Below are positions 89-30,854 of a stretch of 64,000 nt of DNA, piece after piece. The position numbers and the translations under genes were made by a program. Numbering within the stretch: the first letter of the stretch is position 1; each line of letters begins with the position of its first letter. Source of the stretch: Podarcis erhardii (Eukaryota); the NCBI GenBank assembly GCA_964252035.1, contig OZ176205.1; one strand, given 5' to 3'. The notes below the pieces were generated by a model. It ran no database searches. It was not told where the DNA came from and worked only from the letters and a program-made list of their open reading frames with translations.

Positions 89-2101
89 ACCACCAAATCC
101 AAAATAAAAGCCTCTCCTATCAGTGAAGAAATCCAGCTAAGAATCATCCCCAGAGAAAAATCATCCAGATGCCCCAAACTCTACGGCCTCCCCAAGATAC
201 ACAAAGAAGGAACACCACTCAGACCAATAGTCAGCTCCATAGGCTCACCTCTACAAAATCTCGCTAAATTTCTCGCCAAGCAACTTCAGCCCTATGCAGA
301 ATCCATCTCTTCACACGTACCAAACTCCTTCCAGTTCATAGAAACAATAAAGAAGCAAAACCTACATCCTAATGACCTACTTGTGAGCTTCGATGTTGTA
401 TCTCTCTTCACACAAGTGCCCATTAATGAAGCCTTGACAGCTATTCAAAACAAATACAATCCCCCCGAATACATCTTGGACCTGACCAACCACTGCCTAA
501 CCAACACGTACTTCATCCACAATGGACAAAGATACAAACAGATAGAAGGAGCACCTATGGGATCACCCCTCTCACCGGTCATCGCAAACCTGTACATGGA
601 ACACTTTGAAACCAATGCTTTAGACAAGTCAGAACACAAACCCAAACTTTGGCTCAGATATGTTGACGACACCTTTGTAATTTGGCCACACGGGAAAGAA
701 AAACTGGATAGCTTCCTCACACATCTCAACAACTTACACCCCAAAATACAATTCACTATGGAAATAGAAGCCAACAACCAACTTCCCTTCCTTGACGTCC
801 TAATCTACAAAAAACCTGATGGCTCCCTAGGACACACTATCTACCGGAAAAAAACACACACCAACCGCTACTTACATGCACAATCACACCACCACCCTGC
901 ACAAATAAACTCCGTAGCCAAGACTCTCATCTCCAGAACCAAACGCCTGGCTGACAAAGACCACTTGACAACTGAGTTACAGAATCTCTCAAACGTGTTA
1001 ATTGCCAATGGATACCAGCAAAACAGGATTACGAAGCTAATCCAAAAGGAAACACCCCCCAAAAACCAAGACACAGAAGAAAACAATGGCATGGCCCTCC
1101 TTCCTTATATCAAGGGCACTACAGATAAAATTAGCAAAATCCTCCATAAACACAATATCAAAACAGCCTTTTGCACCAACCAAAAAATAGCCAATATCCT
1201 CAGAAACCCCAAGGATAAAATCCAGTTGGAAAACCAAGGGATCTATGAAATACCCTGCAAAGTCTGCCCAGCCACGTACATTGGACAAACAAACAGACGA
1301 ATAAATGCACGTATCGCAGAACACAAGAATGCCGTCAAAAAAGAAGAAAAAACTTCCTCTCTTTTCCAACACATGAAAGAAACAGGACACGAAATTAATT
1401 TTGCAGATTCCAAATTGCTCTTTAACACGGAACATCACCACAAGAGAATAATCATGGAAGCCATCGAGATAGAGAAACACCCTCACAACATGAACAAGCG
1501 TGACGACACATCCCGCTTGCCAGACATCTGGAAATTAGCCCTCCCCACAAAAACTGACACCAGATCCAGAGGCACACAGAACGCCAACACCAATCAACCA
1601 CACCAGACCCAAACCCAGACCCTCTCCACAGATGAATTACAGACACCATCCAGTAGCCAATCCATGGTGGCACCTCCGGATGCTGCACCCCCCTGCAATC
1701 CCTACACAGATCTGGCTGACACAAGCCACAAAACCACAGCTCGCCCCTATACACGAAGCCAAGCCAGAGCACAACTAAGTACAGTACAGCCATCTTCTCA
1801 GGAAAACTCTTCACAAAGTTCAAGAGGTCAAGACACAAAGACTTTAACAACTAATCCACACCTAATGACCCACCTAAGTGGTACTCAGGATATCACTCAA
1901 GAAATCACTCAAGATATCTCTCAAGTAATTAAGGAACAAAAGAAGAAAAGGCACACTAGCCTGGGAACTTCCTCTCTGCCCAGAACATTGGAGGCTATAC
2001 ACCACACCCCCTCTACAGTATTTATAGGAACTCAAACACTGAGATCCTGCTCTGTTCCAGTAACAAGAAGCCGAAAGCACCAGCCTGAAGATGACGAGTG
2101 A
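89..2101 (+). CDS. PLE polyprotein (reverse transcriptase + GIY-YIG endonuclease + ~185-aa S/T/Q/P-rich extension); partial, one frameshift just upstream
   Basis: The listed ORF 383..2101 extends upstream without a stop to the A7 run. RT and GIY-YIG catalytic motifs are intact. Confidence 0.85.
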   Translation, partial: TTKSKIKASPISEEIQLRIIPREKSSRCPKLYGLPKIHKEGTPLRPIVSSIGSPLQNLAKFLAKQLQPYAESISSHVPNSFQFIETIKKQNLHPNDLLVSFDVVSLFTQVPINEALTAIQNKYNPPEYILDLTNHCLTNTYFIHNGQRYKQIEGAPMGSPLSPVIANLYMEHFETNALDKSEHKPKLWLRYVDDTFVIWPHGKEKLDSFLTHLNNLHPKIQFTMEIEANNQLPFLDVLIYKKPDGSLGHTIYRKKTHTNRYLHAQSHHHPAQINSVAKTLISRTKRLADKDHLTTELQNLSNVLIANGYQQNRITKLIQKETPPKNQDTEENNGMALLPYIKGTTDKISKILHKHNIKTAFCTNQKIANILRNPKDKIQLENQGIYEIPCKVCPATYIGQTNRRINARIAEHKNAVKKEEKTSSLFQHMKETGHEINFADSKLLFNTEHHHKRIIMEAIEIEKHPHNMNKRDDTSRLPDIWKLALPTKTDTRSRGTQNANTNQPHQTQTQTLSTDELQTPSSSQSMVAPPDAAPPCNPYTDLADTSHKTTARPYTRSQARAQLSTVQPSSQENSSQSSRGQDTKTLTTNPHLMTHLSGTQDITQEITQDISQVIKEQKKKRHTSLGTSSLPRTLEAIHHTPSTVFIGTQTLRSCSVPVTRSRKHQPEDDE

Positions 2102-5700: not shown

Positions 5701-8700
5701 ATATGCATACAGCCCTGCGTTGTTATTATTTTTACACCCAATAACTTAATGATGCCAAAAATGATACCTTTTGAAACAAATAAACTGGCATGCAATGTAT
5801 TCTTTTAAAGGTACTTGCTGATTTCCCCACCCGCACCCCAAACTTTCCTCCCCTGAGCGTGCATCTCTGTGTGTGTACATATAATTTATGGAGCTGAATG
5901 TGCAGCTGGCTTTTTTTTCTGACTCACCAAAAGAGAGGTGGGGCAGGGAGCTGTATGCTATTTGGAATAGAAGGATACAGCACAGCTCCTGCTTTGTCTC
6001 TGCCTGTGTCTACATGTGAAGAGCAGTAAGGAAACTGATAGGAATGAAACATGTTGTTGGAGGGGTAGACTACTCCTGCAAAGGGAGGCTCTGTTGATAG
6101 GCTTATGCTGCAAGGAAAGAGATGTGAGAGCTCTCTCTCTCTGTGGGGGGGGGGGTATGCCAGTTATGCACACACACATGCACAGGAAACAGCTGTAAAT
6201 AAATAAATGAATGGGTGAGAGTCTTGCATGGAGTCCATAGGCTTCCCATGAAAAGGATTTGAGTGCTGTTGTTGAAGCAATGTCTCCAGGGAGACAAACT
6301 TCCATTAATACTGCCTATGTACAACACATATGCACTGCTGTCTCTGCAATGTCAATCTGCACTTTGCAGCGGAGAACTGTGGTTGTCCTGCATTTGGAGA
6401 GACAACAGAATCAACTTCATCCATTCCATTCACAAAGGGCAATCTTCCGCAGTGAACTATGTACCGAACCAAGGTCAGACTTGAATGGTCACAGCCACAA
6501 GATGTCACTGTTGCCTTACCTGTGTGCATCCACTTGGGCTTGAAGCACAATTACCTGCTTAGTGGGCTTCATCCTATGCCACTCCAGGGCCATTTTGAAG
6601 TAGAATTTGGAACCAGGTGGGCAGGCCCATTGGGACACCTTAGCATTCAAAAACAGCTGTCTTCCCAAGCTATAGTAATTCTGAATTGGGCTTTATTCAA
6701 CCCACACTAAAGGAAAGAGCAGTTTACATTTGTCATTGAAAACAGCCTCTCTGAAGTGATTGCTCGCCAGCCAAGCCAACCATATCTTTCAGATGTACAG
6801 CTTATAAGTATTGAGGCTGTCACATTGTGAGTTTCCCACACTGTCCATTGTAGCCACGATGACAAATCTTTTGCATCATCCTTTAGAAAACAGAACTGAC
6901 TTGTGTTAGCTTGATATTGATGGCATGGATTATTATTTTTAAACTTACTCCCTAATGGAAAGCACTAATGAGTCCTTGCTTTGAAACATTAATATGTTTT
7001 AAATTAATAATCTCTTACCGCAATGGATTGCACAATTGCTTTCATTTCATTTTCAAATGACCTAAGGCAGGGGTGGAAACCTGTGGGCCATTTATTACCC
7101 CCCCTCCCCCAGTACTTTTTTTACCTCCAAGATTCCCAACCGCAAATGACTTCCTCCAAAGAATTCTAGAAACTGTAGTTTACACCTCACAGAGCTACAA
7201 TTCGCAGCACCCTTGAACTATGGTTCCCAGGACTCTTTTGGTGAGGAAGGTGCTTCAAATTATTGCTACCATAAAAAAAAAATGTTGCCAACAAAAGGTC
7301 AAAGGGGCAGGAGACCTCTAAGGTGCCCTGAAGATAATTTCTGGGTTAAGACAGTGAGCCCCACAAAAAACTCTGGGGCACACTTTGGAGCAATCTGATA
7401 CAGGTGTAAAAAGAGTACTCTTAAAACTCCAGTGCACATGTACGTGTCTACCTTCAACGTGACTTTTCTCATTTGTAAGCACCCAATGGGGCTGTGTTGG
7501 GTAATGCCTTAAGTGCCTGGAGTGTGTGCACCATTAATGCCAAGTACCATTCAGTCGAGTAGCATTTCAGATTGCTTGATGCATTCACCTGAAGATGTGT
7601 TCATGTCACTTGATGAGGAGTACGGTATCTCTCCATCTTGAGGTTTGGCATTTTCTCTTGATTTGCTTTGCCGGGGCCTGAAATTGATTACCTCAGCTAA
7701 ACCCACATACATCGCAGTACATAATGTGCAAGGTTTTGAACTCCTTTGATCGGAGATTATGTTTTATATCAACCAATATAAAATGGAGCTGCTTTGTTTA
7801 TGCTGAACAAATACGAAAACATAGGGATAAGCCCGGAGAGCATACCCAGATCATAGCGAAAACTAGTAAGGGGAGCTAGAATGATATCAGGCATTTGCTA
7901 AGGAATACAAGTGGGGAGGAGATACCTAGAGTTGGGGTTACAAGGCTCTGGGAAATCACAAAACAGTGGGGAAACAGTGGCAATTTTCAGGCTTTGCTTC
8001 TGTTTTGTATTTTGCATTGTAACAGATTTTTTCTGCGTGTGACCTACAGAAAATGAATTGACTTGACATCTGCTTAATCAGATTGCATTAAGTAGAAGTA
8101 TTTGACTTTAAGCCAATTTACCCATTCCACGGGAGCTGTAAATATCTGAAAACTTGTGGGCACTCTGAGATGTTCTTATAAGAGGTAGAAACCCCACCAC
8201 ACAGTTGAACAGTTGTAAAAGTTAGAACCATGGCTGCTCTCCCTATAGCCAGGCAATCCCCAATCCTAAATCTGTTATTTAACTACAGGAGGGAATGACA
8301 AGGGAAAGGTTCTAGAATATTTCAGAGAGTGCTCTTCCACATATGAGCTCCCTCACCTATTAAGATGATCAGGAAAGCTCCCCTGCCCCCGTGTATCCTA
8401 TGCTCAACAGGACTGCTGTGGAATGGAGCAGGGCCTTCTCAGTAGTGGCCCTGAGGCTTTTGAATTGTCTCCAAATTCACCTCCATAAATAATAAAGGAG
8501 TCGTGCATCTGTTCAGGCCTTTGGTAGCTAGGAGGAGAGGAGTGAGTCTGCTGTTTTTGACATTTCAGTCAAAATGGACTGGGTTGGTTTTTCAACTTCC
8601 ATTCATAAAGGTCAGCCCACAGTGCTGCCCCCACATATTGACATCTTCTCAGTTGGGTAATAGCCAGAAGCACAAAACAATCACTGCAGCATTTGCTGCT

Positions 8701-9050
8701 TCATTTGTGGTACTGTTAGGTTAGAGCCTTCAGCTGCTTCACTGCAGTTGCTTGCCCAGTCTGAGCATAACCCTCCATGCCCTCTGGAAATTAAAGATTA
8801 GCTCAGTTTCCTTTCAGGCCGCTCACTTCCAACACTGGTTTTGTTAGGGGACTGAGGTACAGTGTGTTATGGCTAGTGATGAAGAAGTTTTCAGTTCTCC
8901 CATGTTCTTCTAGATGCAGAACCGAACTCAAGAAAATAGGAGGCCTTGCAGGGCCCAGACCGTGAGCAAGGGAACAAGTTGTTAGTATTATCAGCAACCT
9001 TTAAGAACATGTGAAGCAGGTCTGTTTGTTGGACATGAATTTACTGGGAG

Positions 9051-10178
9051 TCATGTACTTTCAAAATCTGAGATAGGCGAGGATGATGGGAACACAACAT
9101 TTTCAATAACAGGCTGCTCTTCTAGCTCAAAAAGGGGTGGCAAAATAGCCCCACCTGGCTCTTCCTCTGGATTGGGAGGAGTTAGAAACATGACACCTTC
9201 TTGGTCAGGATTCTCAAAAGTGAGAGAAGGCAACAGGGGAGAGGCATCTTTTTCAGCATTCTCAAAAGTGGGAGAAGGCAACAGGGGAGAGTCATCTTTT
9301 TCAGCATTCTCCAAAGTGGGAGAAGGCAAGAGGGGAGAGTCATCTTTTTCAGGATTCTCCAAAGTGATAGAAGGCAACAGGGGAGAGTCATCTTTTGGGG
9401 AGTCCGGAACAGAAAGGACTGTGACTTCTTTTTCCTGCTTGGTCTCGCCATCGCCTTTAGGAAAAGAATCCTGTTTCTTCTTCCTTCTACGACGGAAGTA
9501 CCAGCAGCAGCTGCACAGAGACAGGGAATCTTTATTACCATAAGGCATGTGGATCTTAGTAGGCACCCCTCCCATACAGCTCTGGTTGCCCAGAACCCCA
9601 CGAGCAAAATACAGGAAGGGACACATATAAGGAATATGGAAGCCAGATGCATAGGAAAGTGGTAACATCCCCCTTGCCCAAGAACTCTGTTGGGTTAGGG
9701 CAGGGGTAGGCAACCTAAGGCTCAATCGCCTTCTCATGGACAGTCTGGGAATCAGCATGTTTTTACATGAGTAGAATGTGTCCTTTTATTTTAAATGCAT
9801 ATCTGGGTTATTAGTGGGGCCTGCCTGGTGTTTTTATATGAGTGGAATGTGTGCTTTTATTTAAAATGCATCTCTGGGTTATTTGTGGGGCATAGGAATT
9901 CATTCATTATTATTTTTTTCAAAATATAGTCCGGCCAACCACATGGTCTGAGGGACGGTGGACCGGCCCAAGGCTGAAAAAGGTTGCTGACCCCTGGGTT
10001 AGGGTATGCTGGTTGGGGTATCCTGGCCAGGATCAGGTGGTGGTTACTGAAAAGTGATAATAATCAAATTGTAGAAGGCATGTGGGGAAACTATGCAAGG
10101 GGGCTGTATTCAGAGGAAGGGCAAAGGTGGAATGAAAGCAATACCTGTTTGGTGCACTCTAGTCCCAGAAGCCAGGAA

Positions 10179-10220
<42 letters not shown>

Positions 10221-13200
10221 TTATACCCCGCCCATCTGGATAGGTTTCCCCAGCCACTCTGGGCGGCTTCCAACAAAACACTAAAATACAATAACCTATT
10301 AAATATTAAAAGCTTCCCTAAACAGGGCTTCAGACATCTTCTAAAAGTTTGGTAGTTGCACTGCACTGGTGGTGCAGAAATATGATCCTGTAGTGGAGGC
10401 ATTCCCTGGGCACCCCCACCCCCAATTATCTGTGATAACTGGTTGCACAGCCACTGTCATTTCTCAGGATCTCTTGGGACACTGCCCTAACTTAATGACC
10501 AGCCACACATCTCTTCGGCCCACCAAATTTTACAGAAGCGGGCTTAGACAGGAAAGAAGAAAACCCAGAACTCACAGCACAATGATACAGAGGCAAGTAA
10601 GCAGCAGGACGAGAAAGATCACCAACAGAGCAGGAAATCCATGTGTTGGAGGGACTGTGTGGAAAAAGACACAGATCACTCAAGAGTGCCAGTTCTCCTC
10701 AGCACCCAGAGCCAAGCTGCCTATCCAGCAGTAGCACCTGCCTCTATTAAGTTAAACAGGATGACAGGTTAAGTATCACAGTGGAAAGAAAGGCCAAAGG
10801 GAAATAGGCAGCCAGTATAAACAAACACTGTTTGGACCAAATTCACACATGCGCAGAACTGTTCCCTCACTAGATGCTCGTATATATGGTTGCAGTCTAA
10901 AAGCGCTGTTTCTTAGGTACCTAAGAACACAAGAAAAGCCTTGCTAGATCAGGCCAAAGGACCACCTCCTTCAGCATCTTGTTCTCACTGAGGTCTGCAG
11001 GAAGCCTGCAAGCAGGACATGAGTGCAACAGCCAGTAGTGGAGGTGGAACATAGCCATCTGAAGATAAATCTGTCTTTGGATTTAACATACAGGATTGAG
11101 GGGCCATTAAGTATACAGAGCATCACCTTAGGGAAGATGGATAATTAACACGATCACAGGAGGTGAAATTTAACTCTCCTGTTGTGAGTCTGAGTCGTCT
11201 GGTAAGAATTTACTTCTACATCACTCTGTCTGTTACCCAGGTGAGGGGCCACCTTTTAAATAAAACACAGAACCAAGGAAACTAATTCAAGTCCAGCATC
11301 CAGGACTGAAGTAAATCCCTCCTCTGGAGCTAGTATTTCCATTGGGAAGAAATTCTCCATTGCAGCAAATCTTCCCAACTTCAGAGGAGGGATTTTTCTC
11401 AGGACTGTGGCAAGGAAAGAGTTAAAATCCCCTCCCCCTTCACCCCCTACAATCATGATACTTATCAGCCCCAGCCACACAGTTGATGCTATGTGCATTT
11501 TTTTAAAACCTTGAACATATTTTATGTTGTGTCTAGCTTGATTCTCAGTATGCTAAGTCCAAGAACCTGTGCTGGAAAATCCAGAGAGGTCTCTCAGGAA
11601 GCCCTTCCTCATGTCACCCACCTGATACATACCTTCTGGGCTCATGCATTCCGCAGCTGTTCTGGCAGCAGGATGCAAGGTTGACCCGTTGTGGTAGCAC
11701 TGAATGCACACAGTTGCCCCATAGCGCAGGCTGTATGATCCGTTTGGGCAGGGAACACAATTTCCAGCTGCAGCCACACTATATGTTCCAGGAGGGCACA
11801 CGGCTGTCAAGCAAAATGGCAGATAAAGGCATGGAGGGGGGAGCGAAAGGAGCAGAGCCTGAAATATAGACAGCACACAGGTTTCACTCCTCCATCAGCT
11901 AAGCTGGGGCTTAGGGAGAGAGGGGTTTCAAAGCTGGCCGCATACCGTGTGAGCCCTACCCAAGGGGCATTGTTTTTCAATTCTGCTCCTCAAAGGAGTT
12001 GTGGAGATGGTGTCTCTTCCTGGAGTCAAGGGAGTCATGCTTAGCGCAATGTGCTAAACAGGTGGACAAAATAGCTCTGAATGGATGGAATTGCAGATCG
12101 GATCCAAGGGCTGTGTACACACCATGCATTTAAAGCATGTGACTTCCCCCAAAAATATATTGGGAACTGTAGTTTGTTAAGGGTGCTGAGAAATATAGCT
12201 CCATAAGGGGTGAAAACTAAAGTGTACACAGCCCAAGGGCACCTGGCAGAGCTACAGTGAAACCCTAGAGCAGTGTTTCCCAACCTTGGGTCTCCAGCTG
12301 TTTTCGGACAACAGTTCCCATCATCCCTGACCACCGGTCTTGCTAGCTAGGGATGATGGGAGTTGTAGTCCAAAAACAGCTGGAGACCCAAGGTTGTGAA
12401 ACACTGCTCTAGAGGAAGGGAAGGTAGAAAGAAGAGAGCCATGACAAACCCAGTGCTCTCCAGATGTTTTGGGGCTGGTGGGAGTTGTGTTCCAAAACAT
12501 CTGGAAGGCACTGGGTTTGCAAAGGCTGGGGTGACAGCTAAGAACAAATGTGGCAAGAGGCTTCCCAGTGGTGTAAACAAACACTGCAGTCTATGGGACC
12601 AGAGGCAGCGTCTGAGGAGGGATGAGGCAGCAGCTCATGGATCACCTGCTCCACTCACTACAGCAGTCGGGACAGCGTGCCTGTAGCTCCGGGGTCTGTC
12701 CAAAACCGTCCAGGCATGTTCCACCCTCCAGGAAGTTGACAAAGGTGTTGACAAAGGAAGTGCGGGAGGTGGGCGCCTCTCCCAAGGGGAAACGTTTGTT
12801 GTTCTCCATGAATATGGTTATTGCTTCCTCGGCCTGTAGGGAGATGCATAGGGTGGTTCAAGAGTGAGGGAAGGAAGACTGGGAGGTCTGCTTTTTGTTA
12901 TTGATCTTTTTTTCTGAAAAAGGAAGGAAAACAGGAGTGCAGGGAAAACAGAGAAGGATAAGAATCTGGTGACAGGGTCATCACAAGAGTGAGTGAACAA
13001 AATGTGGCAATTCCATAGTAAATGCCTAGAATGCAAGCACCCATCCTTTCTTTGAAATATGCATAACCATGAGGTTCTTGCTTTTATTGCCTCAAAGTAA
13101 ATAACCCCAGCCATTCCATGTGCAGCGATGCACAATAACCTTGTTCCAGAAGATAAAAGACATGGTTGCCCTTTGCAGCTCAACAACATATGTAGGTACA

Positions 13201-16200
13201 AAACCCCAGCAAACTGATTTCCTGGTAGGGTAGAGATGAGGTTTGGTGACGTACCTGCTGCAGATTGCTCAAGACAGCTCCATTATAACAATCAAATTCC
13301 AGTGCATCAGCCTTGGGGGAGCAGAACTTATCCCAGTCCTTCCCAAAAGGAGATACTAGAAAACAATGACAAATATGTTACAGTCCCTTTGCCAATAGGC
13401 TCGCTCTTCCATCAGTGCACACAGAGTCCAAACCCTCATTCCAGGATATGGCAAAATAGATCCACTATATGGTGCTTGCATGAATGCAGTTAATTACCAT
13501 ATTTTTTGCCCTATAGGACGCACCGGCCCATAGGACGCACCTAGTTTTCAGGGGGGAGAAATCAAGTAAAAAAATATGACCCCCCCCCCGCAGCTCTGGG
13601 AGCAATGGACAGGCTGCACGCAGCCTGTGCGCTACTCCAAGACCTTCTCCCTGCTTTTGTGGGAGGTGGCGGAATTCCCCCACCTCCCGCAAAAGCCCAC
13701 AGGAGCCCAGCGTGACTCCTGCGGGCTTTTCGACCAGGAGGGAGAAGGGACTGAAACGGCCAATCAGTCCCTTCTCCCTCCTCGAGGAAAAGCCCCCAAG
13801 AGTGGCGCACTTTTTAAAGGGTGCGCAGCTCCTGCGGGCTTTTCTAGGAGGTGGGGGAATTCCCCCCCTCGTAGAAAAGCCAGCAGAAGCCGCGGAGCCC
13901 CTTTAAAGAGTGTGCAGCTTTTGCAGGAGGTGGGGGAATTCCCCCATCTGCCGCAAAAGCCCGCAGGAGGGTTGGAGAGTAGCGGGAAGGCGTCGCACAC
14001 CTTCCTGCTGCCCCCCATCCTCTGGGGCTGACGATGGGGGAAGCACTGCTTTCCCCACCGCCAGCCTCGAAGCCGGGTTGGAGAGTAGCGGGAAGGCGTC
14101 GCCCCATCCTCAAAGAGCAGACTCTCCTGGCTTCAGTGGAAGCAACGCGAAGCCTCCGGAGCGCAGGCTTCGGAGGCTTCGCGTTGCTATCGCTGAAGCC
14201 AAGGAGCCTGCATTCGCCCCATAAGACGCACACACATTTCCCCTTAATTTTTGGAGGGGAAAAAGTGTGTCTTATAGGGCGAAAAATACGGTATGTTAAT
14301 TCAACTTAGCGCAACCCTCCAGAGCATGATACATATCCATTGCCACCCTTGCTGCTTAAGAAATGTTCCTCCAGCCAATCCAAGGCAATGTACCTTTACC
14401 CCAAATCTGTCTGTTCTCTGCAAAGACACACACTGAGGCTACACTTACTTCTGCTGTTTTCAGTAGGCAGTCCTAGCTGGTGAAATCCTGCCTTTCTGCA
14501 CGAGCCTCTCCTGCTCCAAACTTCACTTCCTCCCCAAACTGTGACTGAACCCAGTCATCCTGACTTCCTCTGCCATCCTCTAGAAACACCCTGAATTTCT
14601 TGGCTCTGACCTTCAAGCTCTACCTGGAAGTTGAACTCATCCAAGGGTTTCTCCATGGTGGGGAAGCAGCTGATGGCCCCAAGCAGAAGTTCACAGTGGA
14701 GGTGGTGCACCACCTCGCTCAGATGCTCTCGCAGGGTCTTCAGGAACCCGTGCGTCAATTCCTCATCGCAAGAGTTGCACTGAAAAAGCAATAGGACGTG
14801 CAGCTCTGCACGTATGTGGTAGCCTGGGAAAAGAGGCAGAGGAAGGGGAATCTGGAAGGCAGCTTCTCCTACAAAAACAGGAGCTCAAAACATGGCAAAA
14901 GTCACATCTTCCACATCATGTCCACCATGAAGAAGTTCAAGAGGACGGAAAGAAATTGTAAACACTTAAGAAAGACAGTAGATCCTCAGGAGAACAGAGA
15001 GAAACTACCTATGTTTGGCCACAGGGTCTGGCCACAGGCCAAAACTTCTCCCACATTTCTTCCAATATATGCCCCCCCCCACTATCTTCCTCCTGGTTCC
15101 AGCCAATCACCCATCTCATCAAATAGTTCAGTCCCCTTTGTTTCACTATCCTTCAAGACATCTGGAATCCACTCACCCACCACTGTGTGATAGAAAGTTT
15201 TAGTATGGAGTTGGCCATCCATGGTGTAGGAAACTGTGCAGGTATACAGTCCACTGTCATCAGTATGAAAATCATGCAGAGTCAGGGAAGCATCACCACT
15301 GAGGGGATGGGTTCCTGAAAGTAGAGGGCAGAATCAGCCTAAGAAGAACAATGTTCTGTTACAACCAGCTTAGGCACCAATACTGAGGTCAAGAGAAACC
15401 CCCTTTTAATACTTCTATAGCTTCATGTGGCTCTCGGCTCATTGGTACATGGATGCATCAAGAGAGTCTAATTATTTTCTGCTGCCCTTATGCCATGAAT
15501 GCCCATACAAAATACCTTTCTTGAATCCCAACATTCTACACCGTATTATCTTATTATAGGAACCATGCACTGGGTAGCTTAGATTGGCAGGTACAGTTAG
15601 TCAATATTTTGTGACATGCTGATACTATTTTACAACCAAGTTTTGGGTTTGGAAAAGCAAGTTGTCTCATAGCTTGCTTCAGTCATAACTTTTAAGTAAC
15701 AGAAACCTTAAAAAGCTGAGCTCTGGGTCAATTTCACTTCCAGTAGTTCTGATGTTTTTGCCAATATGCCTGTTGTGAAGAATAATCTGTTGAACTCTCC
15801 AGACTTTAATTTGGGCAGGCAGTTTCAGGTCAACTTGGTTTCACATCTGGGAAGTTTAACAGATGCATCAATATATTTGCAAGTTACCTTTTCATACATT
15901 TCCAATCCTCACCTCAAGCAGTGATTGAACTGGTATAAGAGGTAAAGATGGGCTCCTTAATGAAATCCACAGGGCCCAATCCCCACTCACTCCAATTTTA
16001 GCCACATAATGGGCTCTCTGTAGCAGTCATTAGGGGGAGGAGTGACACAACATGGGCTCTTGCCCAAGGCACAAGGACAGAGGGCACAGGCAAGACTAAA
16101 CTAATTCTCAACATAAAATGCTTGGAAAATATTATCTTGGGTGCTAAAGTTCAAATCAGTCTGAGGTGCAAAAAAATATCTGTTGCTGATCATTCTAGAA

Positions 16201-18144
16201 AAAATATTGGCATCCCTGGGACACCAACAGGTGCCTTTTCCCAAGTAATCCATCCTCTTCTTTCCCTCACACATCTGTCCCTGACATCTACTGAGAGATC
16301 CTAGAGTCCCAAGGAATAAGGCCTAACCTTCATTTTCCAGGCTCCAGTTGTAGGTGGGATTCATACCAATCACAACATCCATCTCTGGAGACTTGCAGGG
16401 GATAGTAATTTCCTTGGCACCAATGTGGACAAAGATGGTGTCTGAAAAAATAGGTAGGTATAGTGGTTAGCGTGTCTGACTAGAACCAGGAAGACCCGGG
16501 TTCAAATCCCCCCTTGGCCATGAAGTTCCCTAAATGAGCCAGCCACTACCTCTCAGCCTAATCTACCTCATAGGGTTGCCATGAAGATAAAATGGAAGGT
16601 GGAAGAGCTGTGTACTCTGGTTTGGGCTTTTTGGAGGAAAGACAGGGTTTAAATTTAGTAAATAATGAATAAATCAGAAGAATCAATTTGGCATTGGTGA
16701 CAGGGCAATGAGAAAACAAGGTTCTTGGTTGGGCTTTGTGTTAATGGGCACAAATCATCTAATGATCATCTATCGCTTGGCTAGCTCAGGTGGCCATAGC
16801 GCAGTGCCAAGGCCATGGATTCTAGGCACAGATCAGATCGCCAGTGAAGATGAATGAAACAAGGCCACAGTGGATTGAGCTGATTGTCTCCATTTATTGC
16901 TTGCTTATTTTACTTAGTGCAGTGTCAGCTAAATGGAACTGATCTTTATTACATTCTCACCCATCTCTCCAGCTGTCTTTCTAACACGTGCCAGTCCTGC
17001 AGAAGTTCCATTGTCAGACAAGTCAAGGTGAAGTCCACAGCCTGAAAAGGAGCACAGACTTCAGCATGATGCCTCCTTTGGAAAGTATTATTACAGACTT
17101 GTCTGCTGTATCTGTGTGTTCATAAAGCAGCAGTTCCCAGCATCACAGTACATTGTGCGGTCTGAAACCCACCCCAGAGCTCCCATGTTTTGACCAGGGA
17201 GAGTCGGAAGTTAAATTGGGATATACTGGCAAATCCCCGGATGACAGAGTATTTCCACAACAGCAAGTAAAACTGATATATATCTGCCATTACCGACTTT
17301 GTAGAAATCACTTATCTCTCAGCCTCAGTGCTCCTCACCTGGAAGGTAAGCAGCAATCTTATCACCATACCCAAGAGGAAGCCCTAGTAAATTCAACAGG
17401 ACTTCCTTCTGAGTACACATAGGATTGCATTATTGGCTGCCGCTGGCCAGTTTTAGAGTTCTGTGTTAAAATCCCTAAACTGCAGTAACTTAGATATTGA
17501 ATTATTAATTATATATTTATTTTTTGATGTACTTATTGTTACAATACATTTTCATTTGTGTATGTAGTTTATTCCAGTGTATGGTTTGTGGGGTGAGCCA
17601 GGTAATTCTGCCTGCTGACCACCCTTTTCCATGGAGTGCCAATCCTGTTCCCACCGCCACCTTTGTACAATGTGGCTCTGTACTGTCCACCCACCCCGGC
17701 CAGGATCTTGCTCCTGACACCATTTGGTAGACCTCAGGATGTGATAGCAATATACAAAGTCGGTTTCAGAAGTCTCAAATTGAACTTCACTCCAGCTCTC
17801 TAGCTCCATACAAGGAGCCATTTCGGTCCAGAATATTGTGTTTTTGAGCTGCCTGCGAGGCGATTCCATCCGTTTTTGTGGGCAGATTCGAATGTTAATT
17901 GAATTAATAAACTCGTATAACAGGCAGGCGTTTAGGAGACCGTGCCCTTGGCTCTTGTCACAGGCGACTGCAGCTCTGATGTGCTACCACCACATCCTCG
18001 AGGAGACACCCGGCTGCAGCCGAGCCCCTCGATAGCACCCTTCTCCGTACCGGGCCCATCGCACAGCAATAGGACTAGGATCCCCAAAGCGACGCCGGCC
18101 GACCAGCAAGACATGTAGCCAGACTTAAGGGCGATCTGTCCCAT
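9051..18144 (-). CDS. ZPBP/Sp38-family paralog, predicted type I membrane protein, 541 aa. Exons (-): 18144-18051, 17041-16961, 16441-16328, 15314-15177, 14823-14611, 13355-13255, 12833-12659, 11803-11633, 10654-10576, 9510-9051
   Basis: All 9 introns are GT-AG and the phases chain without stops (1626 nt). Signal peptide AGVALGILVLLLC; Ig domain IPC..YNW..LTLHDFHTDDSGLYTC; LREHLSEVVHHLHCELLLGAISC, VSPFGKDW and CLDGFG..CPDCCTVCPPGTYS align with recalled ZPBP1/2 segments; complete GCC2/GCC3-type Cys repeat; TM ALLVIFLVLLLTCLCIIVL followed by CCWYFRRRRKKK. The terminal exon is less certain than the rest. Confidence 0.85.
9205..9396 (-). repeat. Coding minisatellite, 4 x 48 bp (16-aa unit KD[DA]SPLLPS[IPL]T[LF]EN[AP][ED])
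   Basis: Units 9205-9252, 9253-9300, 9301-9348 and 9349-9396, in frame in the last exon of the ZPBP-like gene. Confidence 0.95.
9701..9996 (+). mobile_element. Non-autonomous hAT MITE with 8-bp TSD GGTTAGGG
   Basis: TIRs CAGGGGTAGGCAACCT / AGGTTGCTGACCCCTG (14/16 match). TSD at 9693-9700 and 9997-10004. Related to the copy at ~38290-38495. Confidence 0.9.
10179..10357 (-). mobile_element. 3' fragment of a squamate L2-type LINE with (ATT)14 tail
   Basis: Minus strand reads ..GAAGCCGCCCAGAGTGGCTGGGGAAACC..GGGCGGGGTATAAATTATTATT..; (AAT)14 at 10179-10220. Confidence 0.7.
12271..12406. mobile_element. Palindromic hAT MITE
   Basis: Long TIR CAGTGTTTCCCAACCTTGGGTCTCCAGCTG / CAGCTGGAGACCCAAGGTTGTGAAACACTG; 8-bp TSD CCCTAGAG / CTCTAGAG. 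Confidence 0.85.
13497..14291 (+). mobile_element. Non-autonomous Tc1/mariner-superfamily (Tc2-like) element, ~795 bp, GC-rich with internal palindromes
   Basis: TIRs CCATATTTTTTGCCCTATAGGACGCAC / GTGTGTCTTATAGGGCGAAAAATACGG with TA on both sides. Same family as 58006-58449, which is in the opposite orientation. Confidence 0.85.
16455..16675 (+). mobile_element. tRNA-derived CORE-type (MIR-like) SINE
   Basis: A box TAGTGGTTAG, B box GGTTCAAATCC, CORE-like CTCTCAGCCTAATCTACCTCATAGGGTTG, A/T-rich tail AAATAATGAATAAAT. Confidence 0.75.
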
Positions 18145-18585
18145 TCTAGAGCCCCCCGTGAGAACGGAGGGGTCTCCGGAATCCCTGCAAGAGCCATGCG
18201 GTTGCTACGCAACCTAGAGCTCCTTCGTGACGTCGAGGCGTTCTAGAACCCATCTCCGCCACCGTCCCAGCGGAAGACGCTGCTAAGGTTGCGTACGCCT
18301 CTGATAGTATTTGGTCCTCCGCAGCCCCCGTCCGCGCGTTTTTATACGTCATCCGATTGCGACAACCTGGAAGCAACGGTTTTTCGCAAACTAGGCGGCG
18401 TTGTGTTTGAGGTGAGGACTACCGGAAGGTAACGAGCAGCGTTGTGTCGCCTTAGAAGCCAGGAACGGGTGGCTAGAGGTGAGGCGCTAAAGAGAATAGG
18501 TGCTGGGCGGGTGGCAGTTGACACCGCTGGGCGTGTTTTCTCCTCTTAGGCTCTTAGCTTTTTCTTGTTTTCTCTTCTCAGCGCC
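18145..18585. promoter_or_regulatory. CpG-island bidirectional promoter ZPBP-like/SNAPC2
   Basis: CpG-rich. X-box-like palindrome GTTGCTACGCAAC 18201-13; CRE-like TGACGTCG 18228-35; minus-strand TATAAAAA 18346-39 overlapping a CRE half-site; ETS-like ACCGGAAG 18421-28 next to a donor (GTAACG 18429) for a probable non-coding SNAPC2 exon. Confidence 0.7.
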
Positions 18586-21213
18586 ATGAAGCCGCCTTCC
18601 AGGCAGCGTTCAGCCCCTGCTCGCTACAGGACGGCCCCCACGAGCCAGGCTTGGACGGACCCAGAAAAGCGACGCCTTCTTCGCGCCTTGAGAGCTCACG
18701 GCCAGGGTCCGCTGCGGCCCGAGCTGTTGAAGAAGTACCTGCCTTCGAGGGATGAAGAAGAGGTGGGTTGAGGCGTGGCCACGTGGTGGAGGGCAGGATT
18801 CGAACTTGGCCGGGCTGTGAGCTTCCTAACAATCCCACGAGTTGGCGGACTGATGGCCAGCATGCAGGGTTTGGAGACGAGGACTCCATCTCTGGTCAGC
18901 CAGGAGAGCTAGGTGGCCTTGGCAGATAAATTGTAAGAGAGGACTTGGGAGGATGAATTGGAAGAGACCTATGCTCCTTTTTTTAATCCTTCTACACACA
19001 TTCATACTGGCAAATCCTAGTTAAAGGGGAGTAATTGCAAACTTTCTGCCTTGAAGAAATACTCAGTTTTTATGTCTTCAGAAAGTAGGATACTGTCTTT
19101 CCCAAAACATTCAACGTACGTCCCCTAACATGTGCTGCTCTTGCAGATCATGGCATTTGTGGAGCACCTGAAAGAGCGTGTGGCAAAGGAAGCAGTCAAG
19201 GAACAATATCAGTATCGCCAGCGTAAACAGAAGGATGCTCCTATTCCAGCACCTATTGAGGTATGAGAGTTTTAAAAGTGTAGGTAATGTGATATGGCAC
19301 AACATAAGCTAAGGGCTATTCACACAACTGACACTTCCTTTTTTTTTAGATATGGACAGAGTTAGCTGAGAAATTGACGGGTCCCCTTGAGGATGCTGTG
19401 GCAACTGCTTTTTCCCAGGTAACCTTTTCCATGATCTTAATAAGATAGATATTGTTCTTGGTGTAGTAATTTAAGATATCTGTATGTCTCCATCTGACAA
19501 AACGTCTCTGAAATACATGGCTCTGTCCTGGTTCTCTTGGTTCTTGTATAACTTTTCAGACAGATTTAATGCTGGGAAATGTATTTGGTTTACTAGAGAA
19601 TCCCTGACTGCTTGGCATACAAAGTCCATACTTGATTGTGACTTTTTCTCTACTCATTAGGTTTGGACAATTGCATCTACTGAGCCACTCACCTTGCTCC
19701 ATTCCGTGCCTCCAAAGTCAGTGGTGATAAAGAATTCTCAATGTTCATCCCAAAATCTTCATAGTGAGAGTAGGAAATCCAACGAAGAATCTCATGAACC
19801 AACTGTATCATCAGATGTAGAGGAAATAGCCCCTGCAGAAAACAGTGGGTTCCATGTGGACTTTGAAAAGATCTACAAGTACCTTTCTGTGATCTCACGT
19901 GGCTGTAAGGCACCTGAACTCCCACCAGGTGGTAAGTCGGCGTTTGTGTTGGACCAAGATGAATTTAAATAACAGGCAGCTACTGGAAGAAATGTTTCTG
20001 CACTGGAATGTGACTCCAGGTAACCAAGACATCTATTACAGCATGCCTACTGTATTCTTGGTGCCAGGCAAAAACATTTCTCCTTATGGAAGCTGCCTTA
20101 TTGAATTTTATTTGCAATCATTCCATCCCTTCCTTTTTATTCTGTTGCTTTTTCTTTATTGTGCCATTTTTGTCATCTGCTGTGGAGTTCTATTTCAGCT
20201 GAAGGGCTGGACACTAAATCTTAAAAATGCTTCCCAGAAATGGAGCATCCCCTAGGACTGGAAACACTATGTGTCCTGCCAAAAACTGTACTCCTTCTGC
20301 CAAAACTTCCAACATATTTAGTGCTACTAAAAGCAACAACCACCTTGCTGGGCATAGTTGGGTAACCTTTGAGGTTACTGTTATGGATGATGGGTGGGAT
20401 TTGGGGGACTAAGGAAAACATTTCAGAAGGGAATTGTTTGTTATGTTTCTCCCCACAATTTATATTTTCACATATAAATTTCATATTTATATGTGAAAAT
20501 ATGAGTGGCCCGTGAGCGTGGAGACAGGGAGAGTTTTCCTAGGTGAGAGGAAGCAGCAACTTGTCATATAATGTAAAACAGATAAAAGGTTCTCATCAGA
20601 TTTCCAGTTTTTAAAATAAAACTTCTTATATAGAAAGTTATCCTTAACGTCTAAGACATAATTTTTAAAAATCTAAAATAGCTTAGCTGTTAATGTGAGA
20701 AAATTTACTACATTTGTTACACATGTTGGAGGCAGGGTGAAGTTTCAGAATCTGTAACTGGGAGAACAGGAGATAAAAAAATCCTACCTATGTTTCTGCC
20801 AAAGTGAGTGTAGCCACTCTCCTCATACATTTTGCTTGCTTTCTGCAGAGTCAGCTGTGGTCCTAGATTTGCTACTGTCACTGCCAGAAGAGCTGGGCTT
20901 TCTGGACTTTAAGAAGCTGAAGAGTCACATGCACAAATGTTACACAGAGTTGAACACCCACTACACGGGTGAAAGAAGCAGAATGAAAGAGGGCAACCAG
21001 CCTGTAAACAATAATGGGGAGCTATTTCCGCATGTGCAGCCAGCTACTAGTGGCTTACCAGAACAGGAGGAGAGTAGTAGTTCTACCACCACTTCCAAAG
21101 ATGATGCAACTTCTGCCTCTGCCATGGACTGGAAGACTCTGGGTATCTGCCCTTTGAATCCATTCTTGTTTCCTTTAGCTATCCTTGCACGTAAAGAAGA
21201 AAGCTTTGGCTGA
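18586..21213 (+). CDS. SNAPC2: snRNA-activating protein complex subunit 2 (SNAP45), 331 aa. Exons: 18586-18762, 19147-19260, 19350-19418, 19661-19931, 20849-21213
   Basis: MKPPSRQRSAPARY.., PIPAPIE/IWTELAEKLTG, TIASTEPLTLLHSVPPK, VDFEKIYKYLS, ESAVVLDLLLSLPEEL and C-terminal GICPLNPFLFPL match recalled SNAPC2. GT-AG phases are consistent (996 nt). Confidence 0.93.
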
Positions 21214-28700: not shown

Positions 28701-30854
28701 CTCAGCGCCTAGGACTTGCCGATCGCATGGTCAGCGGTTCGAATCCCCGCGGCGGGGTGCGCTCCTGTCGTTCGGTCCCAGCTCCTGCCCACCTAGCAGT
28801 TTGAAAGCACTCTTAAGTGCAAGTAGATAAATAGGTACCGCTTTACAGCGGGAAGGTAAACGGCGTTTCCGCGTGCTGCGCTGGTGCTGGCTCGCCAGAG
28901 CAGCTTCGTCACGCTGGCCACGTGACCCGGAAGTGTCTCCGGACAGCGCTGGCCCCCGGCCTCTTAAGCGAGATGGGCGCACAACCCCAGAGTTGGACAC
29001 GACTGGCCCGTGCGGGCAGGGGTACCTTTACCTTTTACAGAGAGAGCCCTTGTATTTAGAGGCACACAATCTAATTTTTAGTTTTACAATTATTCCAGCA
29101 CCATTCATACTTCCCTTCAAAGCAGAACTATTTAAATGGCAAGAGGTAGATGCAAAACTTGATCAGTTTTAGAAGTGACACCTAGATTGTAAATCAAAGT
29201 CAACTCAATGGTACCTGCCTCTCATAAATCTCCACCTGCCCCATGCCACTACCCCAAAAAAGAGAGACTTCAGAATCACCAACTTTACATACCTTAAATT
29301 CCAAGTTTGTTCAATCCTGGAAGGAATGTGAGATTCCCACCATAGTAGATGACGCCACTACCACCTCTAACCTGCAAACACATAGACCCTCCTTGACCCT
29401 CTTCTCTCACCAGCACTGCCTGTGAAGAAAACATTCTTCCCACTCAGCACTGCATTCAACACCATTGACTGTTCCTGGGAGAGTTTTGCTCGGGAGCACA
29501 TGGACCAAGTCTTCTTCACCTGCTGCTTTTCAGCCACCTGAAAAGAGCACAGAAATCTGCCTTATGCTGTGTCAGACCAGTGGCTCATCTTGTTCAGTAC
29601 TGTATCCACTGACTGGGAGCAGCTTCAGACAGGGGTGTTTTTTAGCCCCACCTGGAGATTATGTGGGTTGAACCTGGGACATTCTGCCTGCATAATAGAA
29701 CTTAACACATCCCCCAAAAGGCAAACTCTTCTGAATCCAAAGTGCTCATGAGAATTTTCCTCCCATCTCTCTTGATTACAGCAGCCAGAGAGGAAAATGC
29801 CTCTCTTATCCAGAGGGATAGTTCTTTGAATTTCAATTGGACCAAAAAAGTCTTACGTTCAAATAAAAGAATAATTTGACCTTGCCCATACTACTTTGGA
29901 GGTTCTGCTCAGGTATCTGCCAGTAAGACCAGTATGCATTGGAGAAAGGGCCTACTCTGTGGTGGCCTCAGTTATGGAACTTGCTAAGTGAGTTTCTGAA
30001 GTGCTTAAGGAGTGCATGAATCTGTCACTTTGCATAACCACAACTTCAGCATCTGGGATTAGCAGGTGAGCAGGTCCACTTCTCAGGAACTAGCCACCAC
30101 TCTCATGCCAAGTATGGGGAACCTCCGGGTATCCTTGGACTCCAACTCCCAGCAATCCCAGCTAGCACTGACAGGCCAGGGGTGATGGGGGTTGGAGTCC
30201 AACAATACCTGGACGGCCAGAGATCCTTTTGTTATGGGCAGATTCAACTCCCAGCTAGATCATGCTTTCCGGCAGAAGCCGCCTCACCTGTTTCCCTTCG
30301 ATGGACTCACTCCGGATCCGCTTCCGAGACGCGCAGCGTAAGGACTGACCTTTCCGCGGGGTGCTTGTCACGTCAGTCAGAGCCTGCCGGGCGCTCGCCT
30401 GCTGCAAGTCGCGAGTCTGCACCGGGCTCACCGTGTCGAACGTCCGCGGCAGGCTGGCGAGAAGCCGCGTTCGCTCGGCCACAGGCTTGGTCCCCCTCTG
30501 GGCGGCTGCGTGCTTGATGCGCAGCGTGTGGACGAAGCGGCGCAGCCGATCCGGAGGACAATTAGAGAGCAGCAGCTGCACGTGATTGTGGTTTGCACCG
30601 AGCTGCACCGAGCTCTTCCCCTCCTTCACGAAGCGTGTGAATAGCCGCACTTCACCCCGCCGCAAGGGGAAGTTCTGGGGGCGCCCCGGACCGCTGGCGC
30701 TGGCCACTTGCAGCACCAGCTCCTGGAACTCGTCCCGGCCCAGCGTGACCCAAGCATCGCGGAGAAGTACACGATTCGGGGCTGCTGCAGCACCCAGGTG
30801 CTCGATCGCTACGGTGCAGCGAACCCGACCGTCCGCTTCGGAGCCTGGTTGCAT
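22788..30854 (-). CDS. PIF1: ATP-dependent DNA helicase PIF1, 640 aa. Exons (-): 30854-30288, 29537-29411, 28569-28444, 28355-28202, 27545-27431, 27350-27244, 26772-26633, 26133-26027, 24883-24796, 24461-24316, 23791-23600, 22841-22788
   Basis: PINT-like N-terminus ([28 protein letters not shown]), Walker [73 protein letters not shown]. All introns GT-AG; 1923 nt in frame. Confidence 0.98.
22898..23211. mobile_element. GC-rich MITE (probable hAT) in the last PIF1 intron
   Basis: Imperfect TIRs CAGGGGTGGAGGAAG / CTTGCTCCGCCACTG. Similar termini at 53914-54067. Confidence 0.6.
28682..29035 (+). mobile_element. Sauria SINE, near full length, flanked by 111-bp direct repeats (28571-28681 and 29036-29146)
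   Basis: A-box GGTAGCGCTGTGG, B-box GGTTCGAATCC 28736-46, internal AAGTGCAAGTAGATAAATAGGTACC, BovB-like tail CCCCAGAGTTGGACACGACTGG, terminal CCTTTACCTTT. CpGs are retained. Confidence 0.93.
30113..30220. mobile_element. Degenerate palindromic hAT MITE
   Basis: GGACTCCAACTCCCAGC..GGGGGTTGGAGTCC inverted pair; same type as 12271-12406. Confidence 0.55.

What the first reader, a model, noticed from the sequence alone, without database searches (positions are those of the whole stretch)
9051..18144. Membrane-anchored zona-pellucida-binding-protein (ZPBP/Sp38) paralog, invisible in the ORF track
Seen: ten exons splice in phase into 541 aa. The order is signal peptide, Ig domain (DDSGLYTC), ZPBP-like helical/Cys region, CPDCC-TVCPPGTYS, a complete GCC2/GCC3 (ephrin-receptor-like) Cys repeat, a 19-aa TM, CCWYFRRRRKKK and a ~150-aa acidic Pro-rich tail. 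Known: mammalian ZPBP1 and ZPBP2 are soluble acrosomal-matrix proteins with no TM, and their C-terminus stops partway through this Cys repeat. Inference: this is a third, membrane-tethered family member, possibly with the ancestral architecture. It could act as an acrosomal-membrane anchor or gamete-recognition receptor in reptiles. It is not among the genes I recall at the human CFAP144-EBNA1BP2-CFAP57 locus, so mammalian loss is possible.
Basis: partly seen in the sequence, partly recalled or inferred. Interest (0 to 1): 0.82.

Follow-up and report, generated by a model that had tools for sequence, protein, structure and literature searches.

The report
Membrane-anchored third ZPBP-family gene
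This lizard gene is real and encodes a membrane-anchored relative of the sperm acrosome proteins ZPBP1 and ZPBP2; it is found in lizards, snakes, turtles, crocodilians and birds, genome pipelines already predict it under misleading "ZPBP2-like" names, and I found no study of it.

Summary
Ten minus-strand exons (18144 to 9051), all with AG/GT borders, splice in phase into 541 aa. The product is 96.7% identical end to end to NCBI's model LOC128415914 isoform X1 of Podarcis raffonei, which uses the same ten exons.

The order is: signal peptide, Ig domain, a ferredoxin/SEA-like alpha/beta domain, a Cys-rich EGF_Sp38_C/Ephrin_rec_like repeat, one TM helix, and a 145-aa acidic tail carrying four DxxxLL motifs.

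- **Constraint:** dN/dS against P. raffonei is 0.33. Exons are 96-99% identical, introns about 94-95%.
- **Range:** single-copy orthologues with TM and tail occur in squamates, a turtle, alligator and many birds, and the gene tree follows the species tree.
- **Family:** fold search puts ZPBP1 and ZPBP2 first (E 1e-14 to 1e-16, 16-22% identity).
- **Third gene:** chicken has separate Swiss-Prot ZPBP1 and ZPBP2, so this is a third family member.

Not shown: testis or acrosome expression, mammalian loss, and an ancestral TM form. No tree with canonical ZPBP1/2 could be built. The gene is already in databases under automatic names, so novelty is moderate.

The parts
18051..18144 (-). Exon 1: start codon and signal peptide (aa 1-32; hydrophobic core aa 10-28)
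   Evidence: 98.9% identical to exon 1 of the P. raffonei model
16961..17041 (-). Exon 2: variable linker carrying an NGT sequon (aa 32-59)
   Evidence: In phase. Present in all Podarcis models. Poorly conserved outside squamates
16328..16441 (-). Exon 3: first half of the Ig domain (aa 59-97; Cys74)
   Evidence: invariant P73, C74, W91
15177..15314 (-). Exon 4: second half of the Ig domain (aa 97-143; the DDSGLYTC motif, Cys122)
   Evidence: V-set 29.4 bits, Sp38 N-terminal Ig domain 19.9 bits
14611..14823 (-). Exon 5: first part of the middle alpha/beta domain (aa 143-214)
   Evidence: 100% identical to Podarcis muralis and P. lilfordi models. AlphaFold pLDDT about 90
13255..13355 (-). Exon 6: middle domain, continued (aa 214-247)
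   Evidence: invariant W, D, C, C, Y
12659..12833 (-). Exon 7: end of the middle domain and start of the Cys-rich domain (aa 248-306; CPDCC)
   Evidence: EGF_Sp38_C begins here in the orthologue
11633..11803 (-). Exon 8: Cys-rich Ephrin_rec_like (GCC2/GCC3) repeat (aa 306-363)
   Evidence: PF07699 at 40.5 bits, matching model positions 1-48 of 48
10576..10654 (-). Exon 9: transmembrane helix (aa 363-389). It is 79 nt long, so skipping it shifts the reading frame
   Evidence: Kyte-Doolittle 3.48. AlphaFold helix 369-404. Predicted isoforms that skip it:
9051..9510 (-). Exon 10: juxtamembrane CCWYFRRRRKKK, acidic Pro-rich cytoplasmic tail, and stop codon
9205..9396 (-). A 48-bp x 4 coding minisatellite encoding four DxxxLL motifs (DDSPLL three times, DASPLL once)
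   Evidence: P. raffonei has five copies
18145..18585 (.). A 441-bp CpG-island spacer shared head-to-head with SNAPC2, whose ATG is at 18586 on the + strand
   Evidence: GC 0.57, CpG observed/expected 1.03.

Best explanation
This is the lacertid orthologue of a single-copy gene found across Sauropsida. It encodes a type I membrane protein of the ZPBP/Sp38 family and is a third family member beside the soluble ZPBP1 and ZPBP2.

Shown:
- The ectodomain has the ZPBP layout: an Ig domain, a ferredoxin/SEA-like alpha/beta domain, and a Cys-rich EGF_Sp38_C/Ephrin_rec_like repeat with 16 invariant Cys.
- Two further exons add one TM helix with flanking Cys and a basic stop-transfer run, and then an acidic Pro-rich tail.
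- The gene is under purifying selection.

Inferred, at about 0.4: the protein is made in spermatids and sorted from the Golgi to the acrosome through its tail motifs. There it would hold a ZPBP-type module on the acrosomal membrane, for matrix assembly or for binding the egg coat. Skipping the 79-nt TM exon may also yield a soluble form like canonical ZPBP.
For: - **Gene model:**. It is identical in exon use to NCBI model P0047 and 96.7% identical in protein.
- **Constraint:** dN/dS is 0.33 overall and 0.04 in the middle domain. Exons 1-9 are 96-99% identical to P. raffonei (exon 10 apart from one extra repeat copy), against about 94-95% for introns.
- **Domains:**. EGF_Sp38_C matches in 45 of 45 members and Ephrin_rec_like in 44 of 45.
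- **Fold:** the eight best Swiss-Prot AlphaFold matches are ZPBP1 or ZPBP2 of mouse, human, pig, rat and chicken, at E 2e-16 to 8e-14 and covering query residues 1-359. The next matches are at 1e-6. The protein language-model look-up gave 0.95 to a ZPBP1 cluster and 0.93 to a ZPBP2 cluster.
- **Third gene:** chicken has Q6PVW7 (ZPBP2, 352 aa) and Q6Q2W4 (ZPBP1), each 18-19% identical to the lizard protein. It also has P0094 (488 aa, with TM), which is about 37% identical. PMC7647744 also reports that ZPBP1 and ZPBP2 coexist in birds.
- **Orthology:** the 23-taxon gene tree follows the species tree with 16 of 20 forks strongly supported. The separate TM exon and tail exon are conserved in guineafowl.
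- **Membrane topology:**
Against: - No expression or localisation data could be reached, so the sperm role rests only on what the paralogues do.
- The promoter is a CpG island shared with the housekeeping gene SNAPC2. That fits broad expression at least as well as testis-specific expression.
- The Sp38 N-terminal Ig profile is below Pfam's cut-off in lizards (16.6 bits against 23.1).
- No tree with canonical ZPBP1/2 was built, so 'third clade' rests on coexistence in chicken and on equal, low identity to both.
- The DxxxLL repeats are not conserved in agamids, snakes or birds.
Confidence: 0.78

Rival explanations
1. It is simply the sauropsid orthologue of ZPBP2 (or ZPBP1), as its database names say, and it kept or gained TM and tail exons.
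For: Automatic names include 'zona pellucida-binding protein 2' (duck), 'ZPBP2 protein, partial' (many birds) and 'zona pellucida-binding protein 1 isoform X1' (Pogona).
Against: Chicken has separate Swiss-Prot ZPBP2 (352 aa) and ZPBP1, each only 18-19% identical to the lizard protein, like the mammalian ones. The names flip between '1-like' and '2-like' for the same gene. Pfam Sp38 scores are near or below the cut-off. The locus here is SNAPC2-PIF1-CFAP57. From memory, mammalian ZPBP2 lies in the IKZF3-ORMDL3 neighbourhood.
Confidence: 0.07
2. It is a ZPBP-fold cell-surface protein with a job outside gametes, such as an adhesion or immune-type receptor. On this reading only the fold is shared with the acrosomal proteins.
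For: The CpG-island bidirectional promoter is shared with SNAPC2. The Ig + SEA-like + Cys-rich + TM layout resembles membrane-proximal modules of mucins, TROP2 and adhesion GPCRs. Fast sequence change fits immune genes as well as reproductive ones. The split from ZPBP1/2 is ancient.
Against: Both characterised family members are spermatid acrosomal proteins (PMC7827414). No signalling motif such as ITIM, ITAM or a death domain was noticed in the tail, which has no Yxx-hydrophobic motif.
Confidence: 0.3
3. The main product is soluble. The TM exon would usually be skipped, giving a ZPBP-like secreted protein, and the membrane form would be minor.
For: TM-exon-skipped isoforms are predicted independently in Podarcis muralis, P. 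raffonei and Pogona. In the window the shifted frame stays open for 108 codons.
Against: The TM helix, the juxtamembrane Cys and basic run, and the C-terminal tail motif are conserved from lizards to alligator and birds. dN/dS of the TM and tail is 0.39 in the membrane-form frame. The frameshifted tails differ in length and sequence between genera.
Confidence: 0.12
4. It is a decaying gene or a chance in-phase exon chain.
For: None found.
Against: The reading frame is intact. Exons are conserved above introns, dN/dS is 0.33, and orthologues occur across sauropsids.
Confidence: 0.01

Closest known systems
ZPBP1 (sp38/IAM38) and ZPBP2, the acrosomal zona pellucida-binding proteins (Pfam PF07354 + PF20626)
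   Same: The ectodomain has the same order of parts: signal peptide, Ig domain, alpha/beta middle domain, and a Cys-rich C-terminal EGF-like repeat. These are the best fold matches over the whole ectodomain, and EGF_Sp38_C is above its cut-off.
   Different: This protein adds a TM exon and a tail exon of about 150 aa. Identity to ZPBP1 and ZPBP2 is only 16-22%. It is a separate gene in chicken. No mammalian member was found. Its expression and location are unknown.
Automatic database entries for the same gene: LOC128415914 (Podarcis raffonei), LOC114599148 (P. muralis), LOC100564912 (Anolis carolinensis), chicken A0A8V0ZRT0, and the bird entries called 'ZPBP2 protein, partial'
   Same: These are orthologues with the same exons and domains.
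   Different: Nothing differs biologically. They are uncharacterised and inconsistently named (ZPBP1-like, ZPBP2-like, ZPBP2, uncharacterized).
Membrane-proximal SEA/ferredoxin-like plus EGF-type modules of type I membrane proteins (MUC13/16/17, Gpr126 SEA, TROP2)
   Same: A beta-alpha-beta-beta-alpha-beta domain is followed by a Cys-rich repeat, a TM segment and a tail. VIA Z-scores are 8.4 (6v55), 7.0 (7pee) and 6.9 (1ivz). The language-model neighbours of residues 145-410 are SEA-bearing mucins, at scores of 0.77-0.78, which is weak.
   Different: There is no Pfam SEA match and no GSVVV-type cleavage motif was seen. Z-scores of this size are common for ferredoxin-like folds, so this is a resemblance and not membership.
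Thyroglobulin type 2 (GCC2/GCC3) repeat region
   Same: It is the best solved-structure match (7n4y, E 1.7e-7, TM-score by query 0.44). There is also a sequence match of the Cys repeat.
   Different: Only the repeat and a neighbouring alpha/beta element are shared. The protein is unrelated overall.

Membership tests
ZPBP/Sp38 family | C-terminal EGF-like Sp38 domain (PF20626) at or above the gathering score of 24 bits | tested here: met
   P0047, which is 96.7% identical to the window protein, scores 27.6 bits. Pogona scores 30.0. All 45 family members match at E up to 1. The window's exon 8 alone gives 15.8 bits because the domain spans exons 7 and 8.
ZPBP/Sp38 family | N-terminal Sp38 Ig domain (PF07354) at or above 23.1 bits | tested here: inconclusive
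   Lizard P0047 scores 16.6 bits and the window's exon 4 alone 19.9 bits, both below the cut-off. Turtle scores 23.0. The bird P0012 scores 28.7, and most bird orthologues carry a precomputed PF07354 hit.
ZPBP/Sp38 family | Whole-ectodomain fold like ZPBP1/ZPBP2 | tested here: met
   Foldseek against Swiss-Prot AlphaFold models: ranks 1-8 are all ZPBP1 or ZPBP2, at E 2.3e-16 to 7.8e-14, aligned over query residues 1-359. The next hits are at 1e-6. TM-scores are low (0.23-0.32) because the multi-domain model has mean pLDDT 62.
Canonical ZPBP1 or ZPBP2 (orthology) | Groups inside the ZPBP1 or ZPBP2 clade, and the product is soluble, 320-350 aa, with no TM | tested here: not met
   A TM helix and tail are present. 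Chicken has separate ZPBP1 and ZPBP2 entries. A formal tree was not possible because canonical sequences could not be fetched.
Canonical ZPBP1 or ZPBP2 (function) | Spermatid-specific expression and an acrosomal matrix or inner-acrosomal-membrane location | not testable with these tools
   No expression data could be reached. Literature searches for the gene's names and LOC ids found nothing.
Ephrin_rec_like / GCC2_GCC3 repeat (PF07699) | A full-length profile match above 23.1 bits | tested here: met
   Exon 8 alone scores 40.5 bits and matches model positions 1-48 of 48.
Immunoglobulin superfamily | An Ig profile match with the Cys...W...DxGxYxC core | tested here: met
   V-set scores 29.4 bits on exon 4 (cut-off 26). 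C74, W91 and C122 are invariant across 12 species.
Type I single-pass membrane protein | N-terminal signal sequence, one hydrophobic helix of about 20 aa, and positive charges on the cytoplasmic side | tested here: met
   Kyte-Doolittle peaks lie at aa 10-28 and aa 372-390 (3.48). RRRRKKK follows the second peak. AlphaFold predicts a helix at 369-404. No dedicated signal-peptide or TM predictor was available.
SEA domain | A Pfam SEA match and the ferredoxin-like fold | tested here: inconclusive
   The fold topology is shared (Z 6.9-8.4 to SEA domains). There was no Pfam SEA hit at E up to 1.

The most novel reading that the evidence does not exclude
The membrane-anchored form may be the ancestral state of the ZPBP family. 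It would predate jawed vertebrates, and soluble ZPBP1/2 would have arisen by losing the TM and tail exons. Sauropsid sperm would then still carry a transmembrane egg-coat-binding or acrosome-organising receptor that mammals lost.

The leads come from AlphaFold-cluster hits whose alignment extends through the TM helix or whose length leaves room for one (A0A4W3JR19, A0A803THP3, R7T448). The tool masked the organisms. From memory of the accession ranges they are elephant shark, Anolis and an annelid.
Probability: 0.2. Interest if true: 0.65.

Novelty: new variant of a known kind. Interest (0 to 1): 0.42.

Why it matters
ZPBP1 and ZPBP2 are textbook acrosomal proteins. Loss of ZPBP1 makes mice infertile through improper acrosome compaction (PMC7827414).

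A third, membrane-anchored member kept under selection across sauropsids gives bird and reptile fertilisation biology a concrete candidate to test. It could tie a ZPBP module to the acrosomal membrane or expose it to the perivitelline layer.

There is also a practical point. Many bird entries called 'ZPBP2' are this gene and not the orthologue of mammalian ZPBP2. Studies that report fast evolution or selection on 'ZPBP2' in birds and tortoises (PMC6993853; bioRxiv 10.1101/2024.06.06.597788) may concern either paralogue.

The finding is not a new kind of system, and the gene model itself already sits in public annotations.

Tried and rejected
- **Tree with canonical ZPBP1/2.** All three word-index searches (the last at E up to 10) returned only this clade. 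No canonical sequence could be fetched, so no tree was built.
- **Solved structures.** The PDB holds no ZPBP.
- **Metagenome scan for further relatives.** 148 pattern matches, none confirmed.
- **Literature.** Nothing turned up for 'ZPBP2-like', 'ZPBPL' or the LOC ids. Lin et al. 2007 (PMC2099232) is not held.
- **Synteny in birds and turtle.** The duck and turtle proteins are not on record. The guineafowl locus shows no called neighbour and no SNAPC2 within 10 kb.
- **RNA evidence from Logan-assembly fragments.** They read through introns, so they are genomic DNA.
- **Pseudogene or chance exon chain.** Rejected on dN/dS and conservation.
- **SEA-domain membership.** Not claimed, because only a generic ferredoxin-like resemblance was found.
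- **Whole spliced window protein.** It could not be passed to Pfam or the structure tools, since no reference exists for a spliced sequence. The 96.7%-identical P0047 served as proxy.
Full report
**1. The observation**

I read the minus strand from 18200 to 9000 and fixed the exon borders by script. The ten exons are 18144-18051, 17041-16961, 16441-16328, 15314-15177, 14823-14611, 13355-13255, 12833-12659, 11803-11633, 10654-10576 and 9510-9051. Each has a canonical AG acceptor and GT donor. They sum to 1626 nt and translate without a stop into 541 aa.

- The Kyte-Doolittle profile has two peaks: the signal-peptide core at aa 10-28, and aa 372-390 (mean 3.48), which is followed by RRRRKKK.
- The tail is 145 aa, with net charge -19 and 24 Pro.
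- It holds four DxxxLL motifs encoded by a 48-bp x 4 minisatellite at 9205-9396.
- Two exons do show up in a plain ORF list, so the gene is not fully invisible there.

**2. Is the gene model real?**

An exhaustive HMMER search with exon 5 (70 aa) against 1.84 billion representatives found 13 proteins. The informative ones are predicted proteins of Podarcis, vipers, Pogona, alligator and birds.

P0047 (LOC128415914 isoform X1, Podarcis raffonei, 557 aa) is 96.7% identical to the window's 541 aa from end to end. The only length difference is one extra 16-aa tail repeat. I fetched its locus as L002. All ten window exons map one to one, and the mapped L002 exons translate exactly to P0047.

Exons 1-9 are 96-99% identical between the two species (exon 10 apart from one extra repeat copy), while the surrounding gene region is about 94-95% identical.

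| Region | dN/dS |
|---|---|
| Whole coding sequence (17 synonymous, 19 non-synonymous changes; dS 0.046) | 0.33 |
| Middle domain | 0.04 |
| TM and tail | 0.39 |

These values come from Nei-Gojobori counting. The gene is therefore functional and constrained.

**3. What the protein is**

- **Pfam on single exons.** Exon 4 matches V-set (29.4 bits) and Sp38 (19.9 bits). Exon 8 matches Ephrin_rec_like (40.5 bits, full length) and EGF_Sp38_C (15.8 bits).
- **Pfam on the whole orthologue P0047.** Ephrin_rec_like scores 34.1 bits and EGF_Sp38_C 27.6 bits (cut-off 24). The Sp38 N-terminal Ig domain scores only 16.6 bits (cut-off 23.1). Bird orthologues pass that cut-off.
- **Family-wide.** All 45 aligned members match EGF_Sp38_C.
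- **Whole-ectodomain model.** An AlphaFold model of residues 1-405 of P0047 has mean pLDDT 62. It shows an Ig sandwich, a beta-alpha-beta-beta-alpha-beta domain, a poorly resolved Cys-rich part and a long helix at 369-404.
- **Fold search, Swiss-Prot.** Ranks 1-8 are ZPBP1 or ZPBP2 of mouse, human, rat, pig and chicken, at E 2.3e-16 to 7.8e-14 and 16-22% identity, aligned over query residues 1-359. The next hits are IL-1 receptor-type Ig proteins at 1e-6.
- **Language-model look-up.** It gave 0.95 to a ZPBP1 cluster and 0.93 to a ZPBP2 cluster.
- **Second model.** A deeper model of residues 145-365 has pLDDT 78.7. Its middle domain is ferredoxin-like.
- **Solved-structure matches.** The best are ribosomal protein S6-type folds and, among extracellular proteins, the Gpr126 SEA domain (Z 8.4), TROP2 (7.0) and MUC16 SEA (6.9). 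Foldseek's top PDB hit is thyroglobulin around its GCC2/GCC3 repeats (E 1.7e-7). I treat these as resemblances only.

**4. A third gene, not ZPBP1 or ZPBP2**

The Swiss-Prot hits include chicken ZPBP2 (Q6PVW7, 352 aa) and chicken ZPBP1 (Q6Q2W4, a fragment). Each is 18-19% identical to the lizard protein, the same as the mammalian ones.

Chicken also has P0094 (A0A8V0ZRT0, 488 aa, with TM and tail), which is about 37% identical to the lizard protein. Chicken therefore carries three family genes. PMC7647744 likewise states that ZPBP1 and ZPBP2 coexist in birds.

All the canonical proteins end where the alignment reaches query residues 354-368. That is at the end of the Cys repeat and just before the TM.

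I could not fetch canonical sequences, so no joint tree exists. This is the main gap.

**5. Range and orthology**

Members with a TM segment and tail occur in lacertids, an amphisbaenian, iguanians, agamids, snakes, a turtle, alligator, and palaeognath and neognath birds. A 23-sequence maximum-likelihood tree follows the species tree, with 16 of 20 forks strongly supported. Branches are long: the two root branches separating lepidosaurs from archelosaurs (turtle, alligator and birds) sum to about 1.35 changes per site. The guineafowl locus keeps a separate small TM exon and a tail exon.

No mammalian, amphibian or fish protein appeared in any search, including the exhaustive one. That search still found birds at 38-44% identity. 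Absence from mammals is therefore likely but not proven. For amphibians and fish the test was too weak.

AlphaFold-cluster hits point to more distant relatives whose alignment extends through the TM helix or whose length leaves room for one (A0A4W3JR19 at 24% identity, A0A803THP3 at 23%, R7T448 at 19%). The tool masked their organisms. My reading of them as elephant shark, Anolis and an annelid rests on memory of accession ranges and is only a lead.

**6. Surroundings**

The start codon at 18144 lies 441 bp from the SNAPC2 start codon at 18586 on the other strand. The spacer is a CpG island (GC 0.57-0.59, CpG observed/expected 0.8-1.0). P. raffonei has the same SNAPC2 and PIF1 neighbours. A WD40 beta-propeller gene that I read as CFAP57 lies further on.

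A shared CpG-island promoter does not point to testis-only expression.

**7. Alternative products**

NCBI models in Podarcis muralis, P. raffonei and Pogona include isoforms that skip the 79-nt TM exon and so shift the frame of the last exon. In the window the same skip gives a 471-aa product without a TM segment, ending at 9184-9182. Such a form would resemble canonical ZPBP in layout. I could not check the RNA support.

**8. Mechanism**

Shown:
- It is a constrained type I membrane protein with a ZPBP-type ectodomain.
- It has 16 invariant Cys in the ectodomain.
- It has Cys residues beside the TM and an acidic tail.

Inferred from the paralogues, which are spermatid acrosomal proteins whose loss disturbs acrosome compaction and which bind the egg coat (PMC7827414): the protein may anchor a ZPBP module to the acrosomal membrane, with the tail motifs directing Golgi-to-acrosome sorting. 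I put this at about 0.4. A role outside gametes is the main rival, at about 0.3.

**9. Novelty**

The gene is already predicted in many genomes under inconsistent automatic names. I found no paper on it. The membrane-anchored architecture is a new variant of a known family rather than a new kind of system.

The naming problem has practical weight, because 'ZPBP2' in bird and tortoise evolutionary studies may refer to either paralogue.

Noticed in passing
window 10576-10654 and 9182-9510 (- strand): Skipping the 79-nt TM exon leaves the shifted frame of exon 10 open for 108 codons, giving a 471-aa product without a TM segment. The same skip is a predicted isoform in Podarcis muralis, P. raffonei and Pogona.
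   Followed up: partly
window 18145-18900: The gene sits head-to-head with SNAPC2 (ATG at 18586, + strand), 441 bp away in a CpG island (GC 0.57-0.59, CpG observed/expected 0.8-1.0). P. raffonei (L002) has the same pairing. No SNAPC2 was found within 10 kb in guineafowl (L001).
   Followed up: partly
window 9205-9396: The 48-bp coding minisatellite has 4 copies here and 5 in P. raffonei, so the number of DxxxLL tail motifs varies between close species.
   Followed up: partly
bird proteins P0060-P0099: [quoted passage not shown] They are not the orthologue of chicken Swiss-Prot ZPBP2 (Q6PVW7).
   Followed up: partly
AlphaFold cluster hits: A0A803THP3 (430 aa, 23% identity) aligns from residue 85 through the TM helix to 404. 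It may be a further TM-bearing family member in a squamate. The organism was masked and the sequence could not be fetched.
   Followed up: no
window 18195-18197 (- strand): An out-of-frame upstream ATG lies 53 nt before the main start. It opens a short upstream ORF that overlaps the main start codon.
   Followed up: no
window 383-2101 (+ strand): A 572-aa ORF carries reverse-transcriptase and GIY-YIG domains, which is typical of a Penelope-like retroelement.
   Followed up: partly
window 26000-31000 (- strand): PIF1 helicase exons lie here, with an N-terminal exon that matches the LRR1-type PH domain profile (PF25344). The P. raffonei locus shows the same domain set in its 640-aa PIF1 model.
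   Followed up: partly
window 8001-9050 (- strand): No AATAAA or ATTAAA occurs within about 1 kb downstream of the stop codon. The 3' UTR may be long or may use a variant signal.
   Followed up: no
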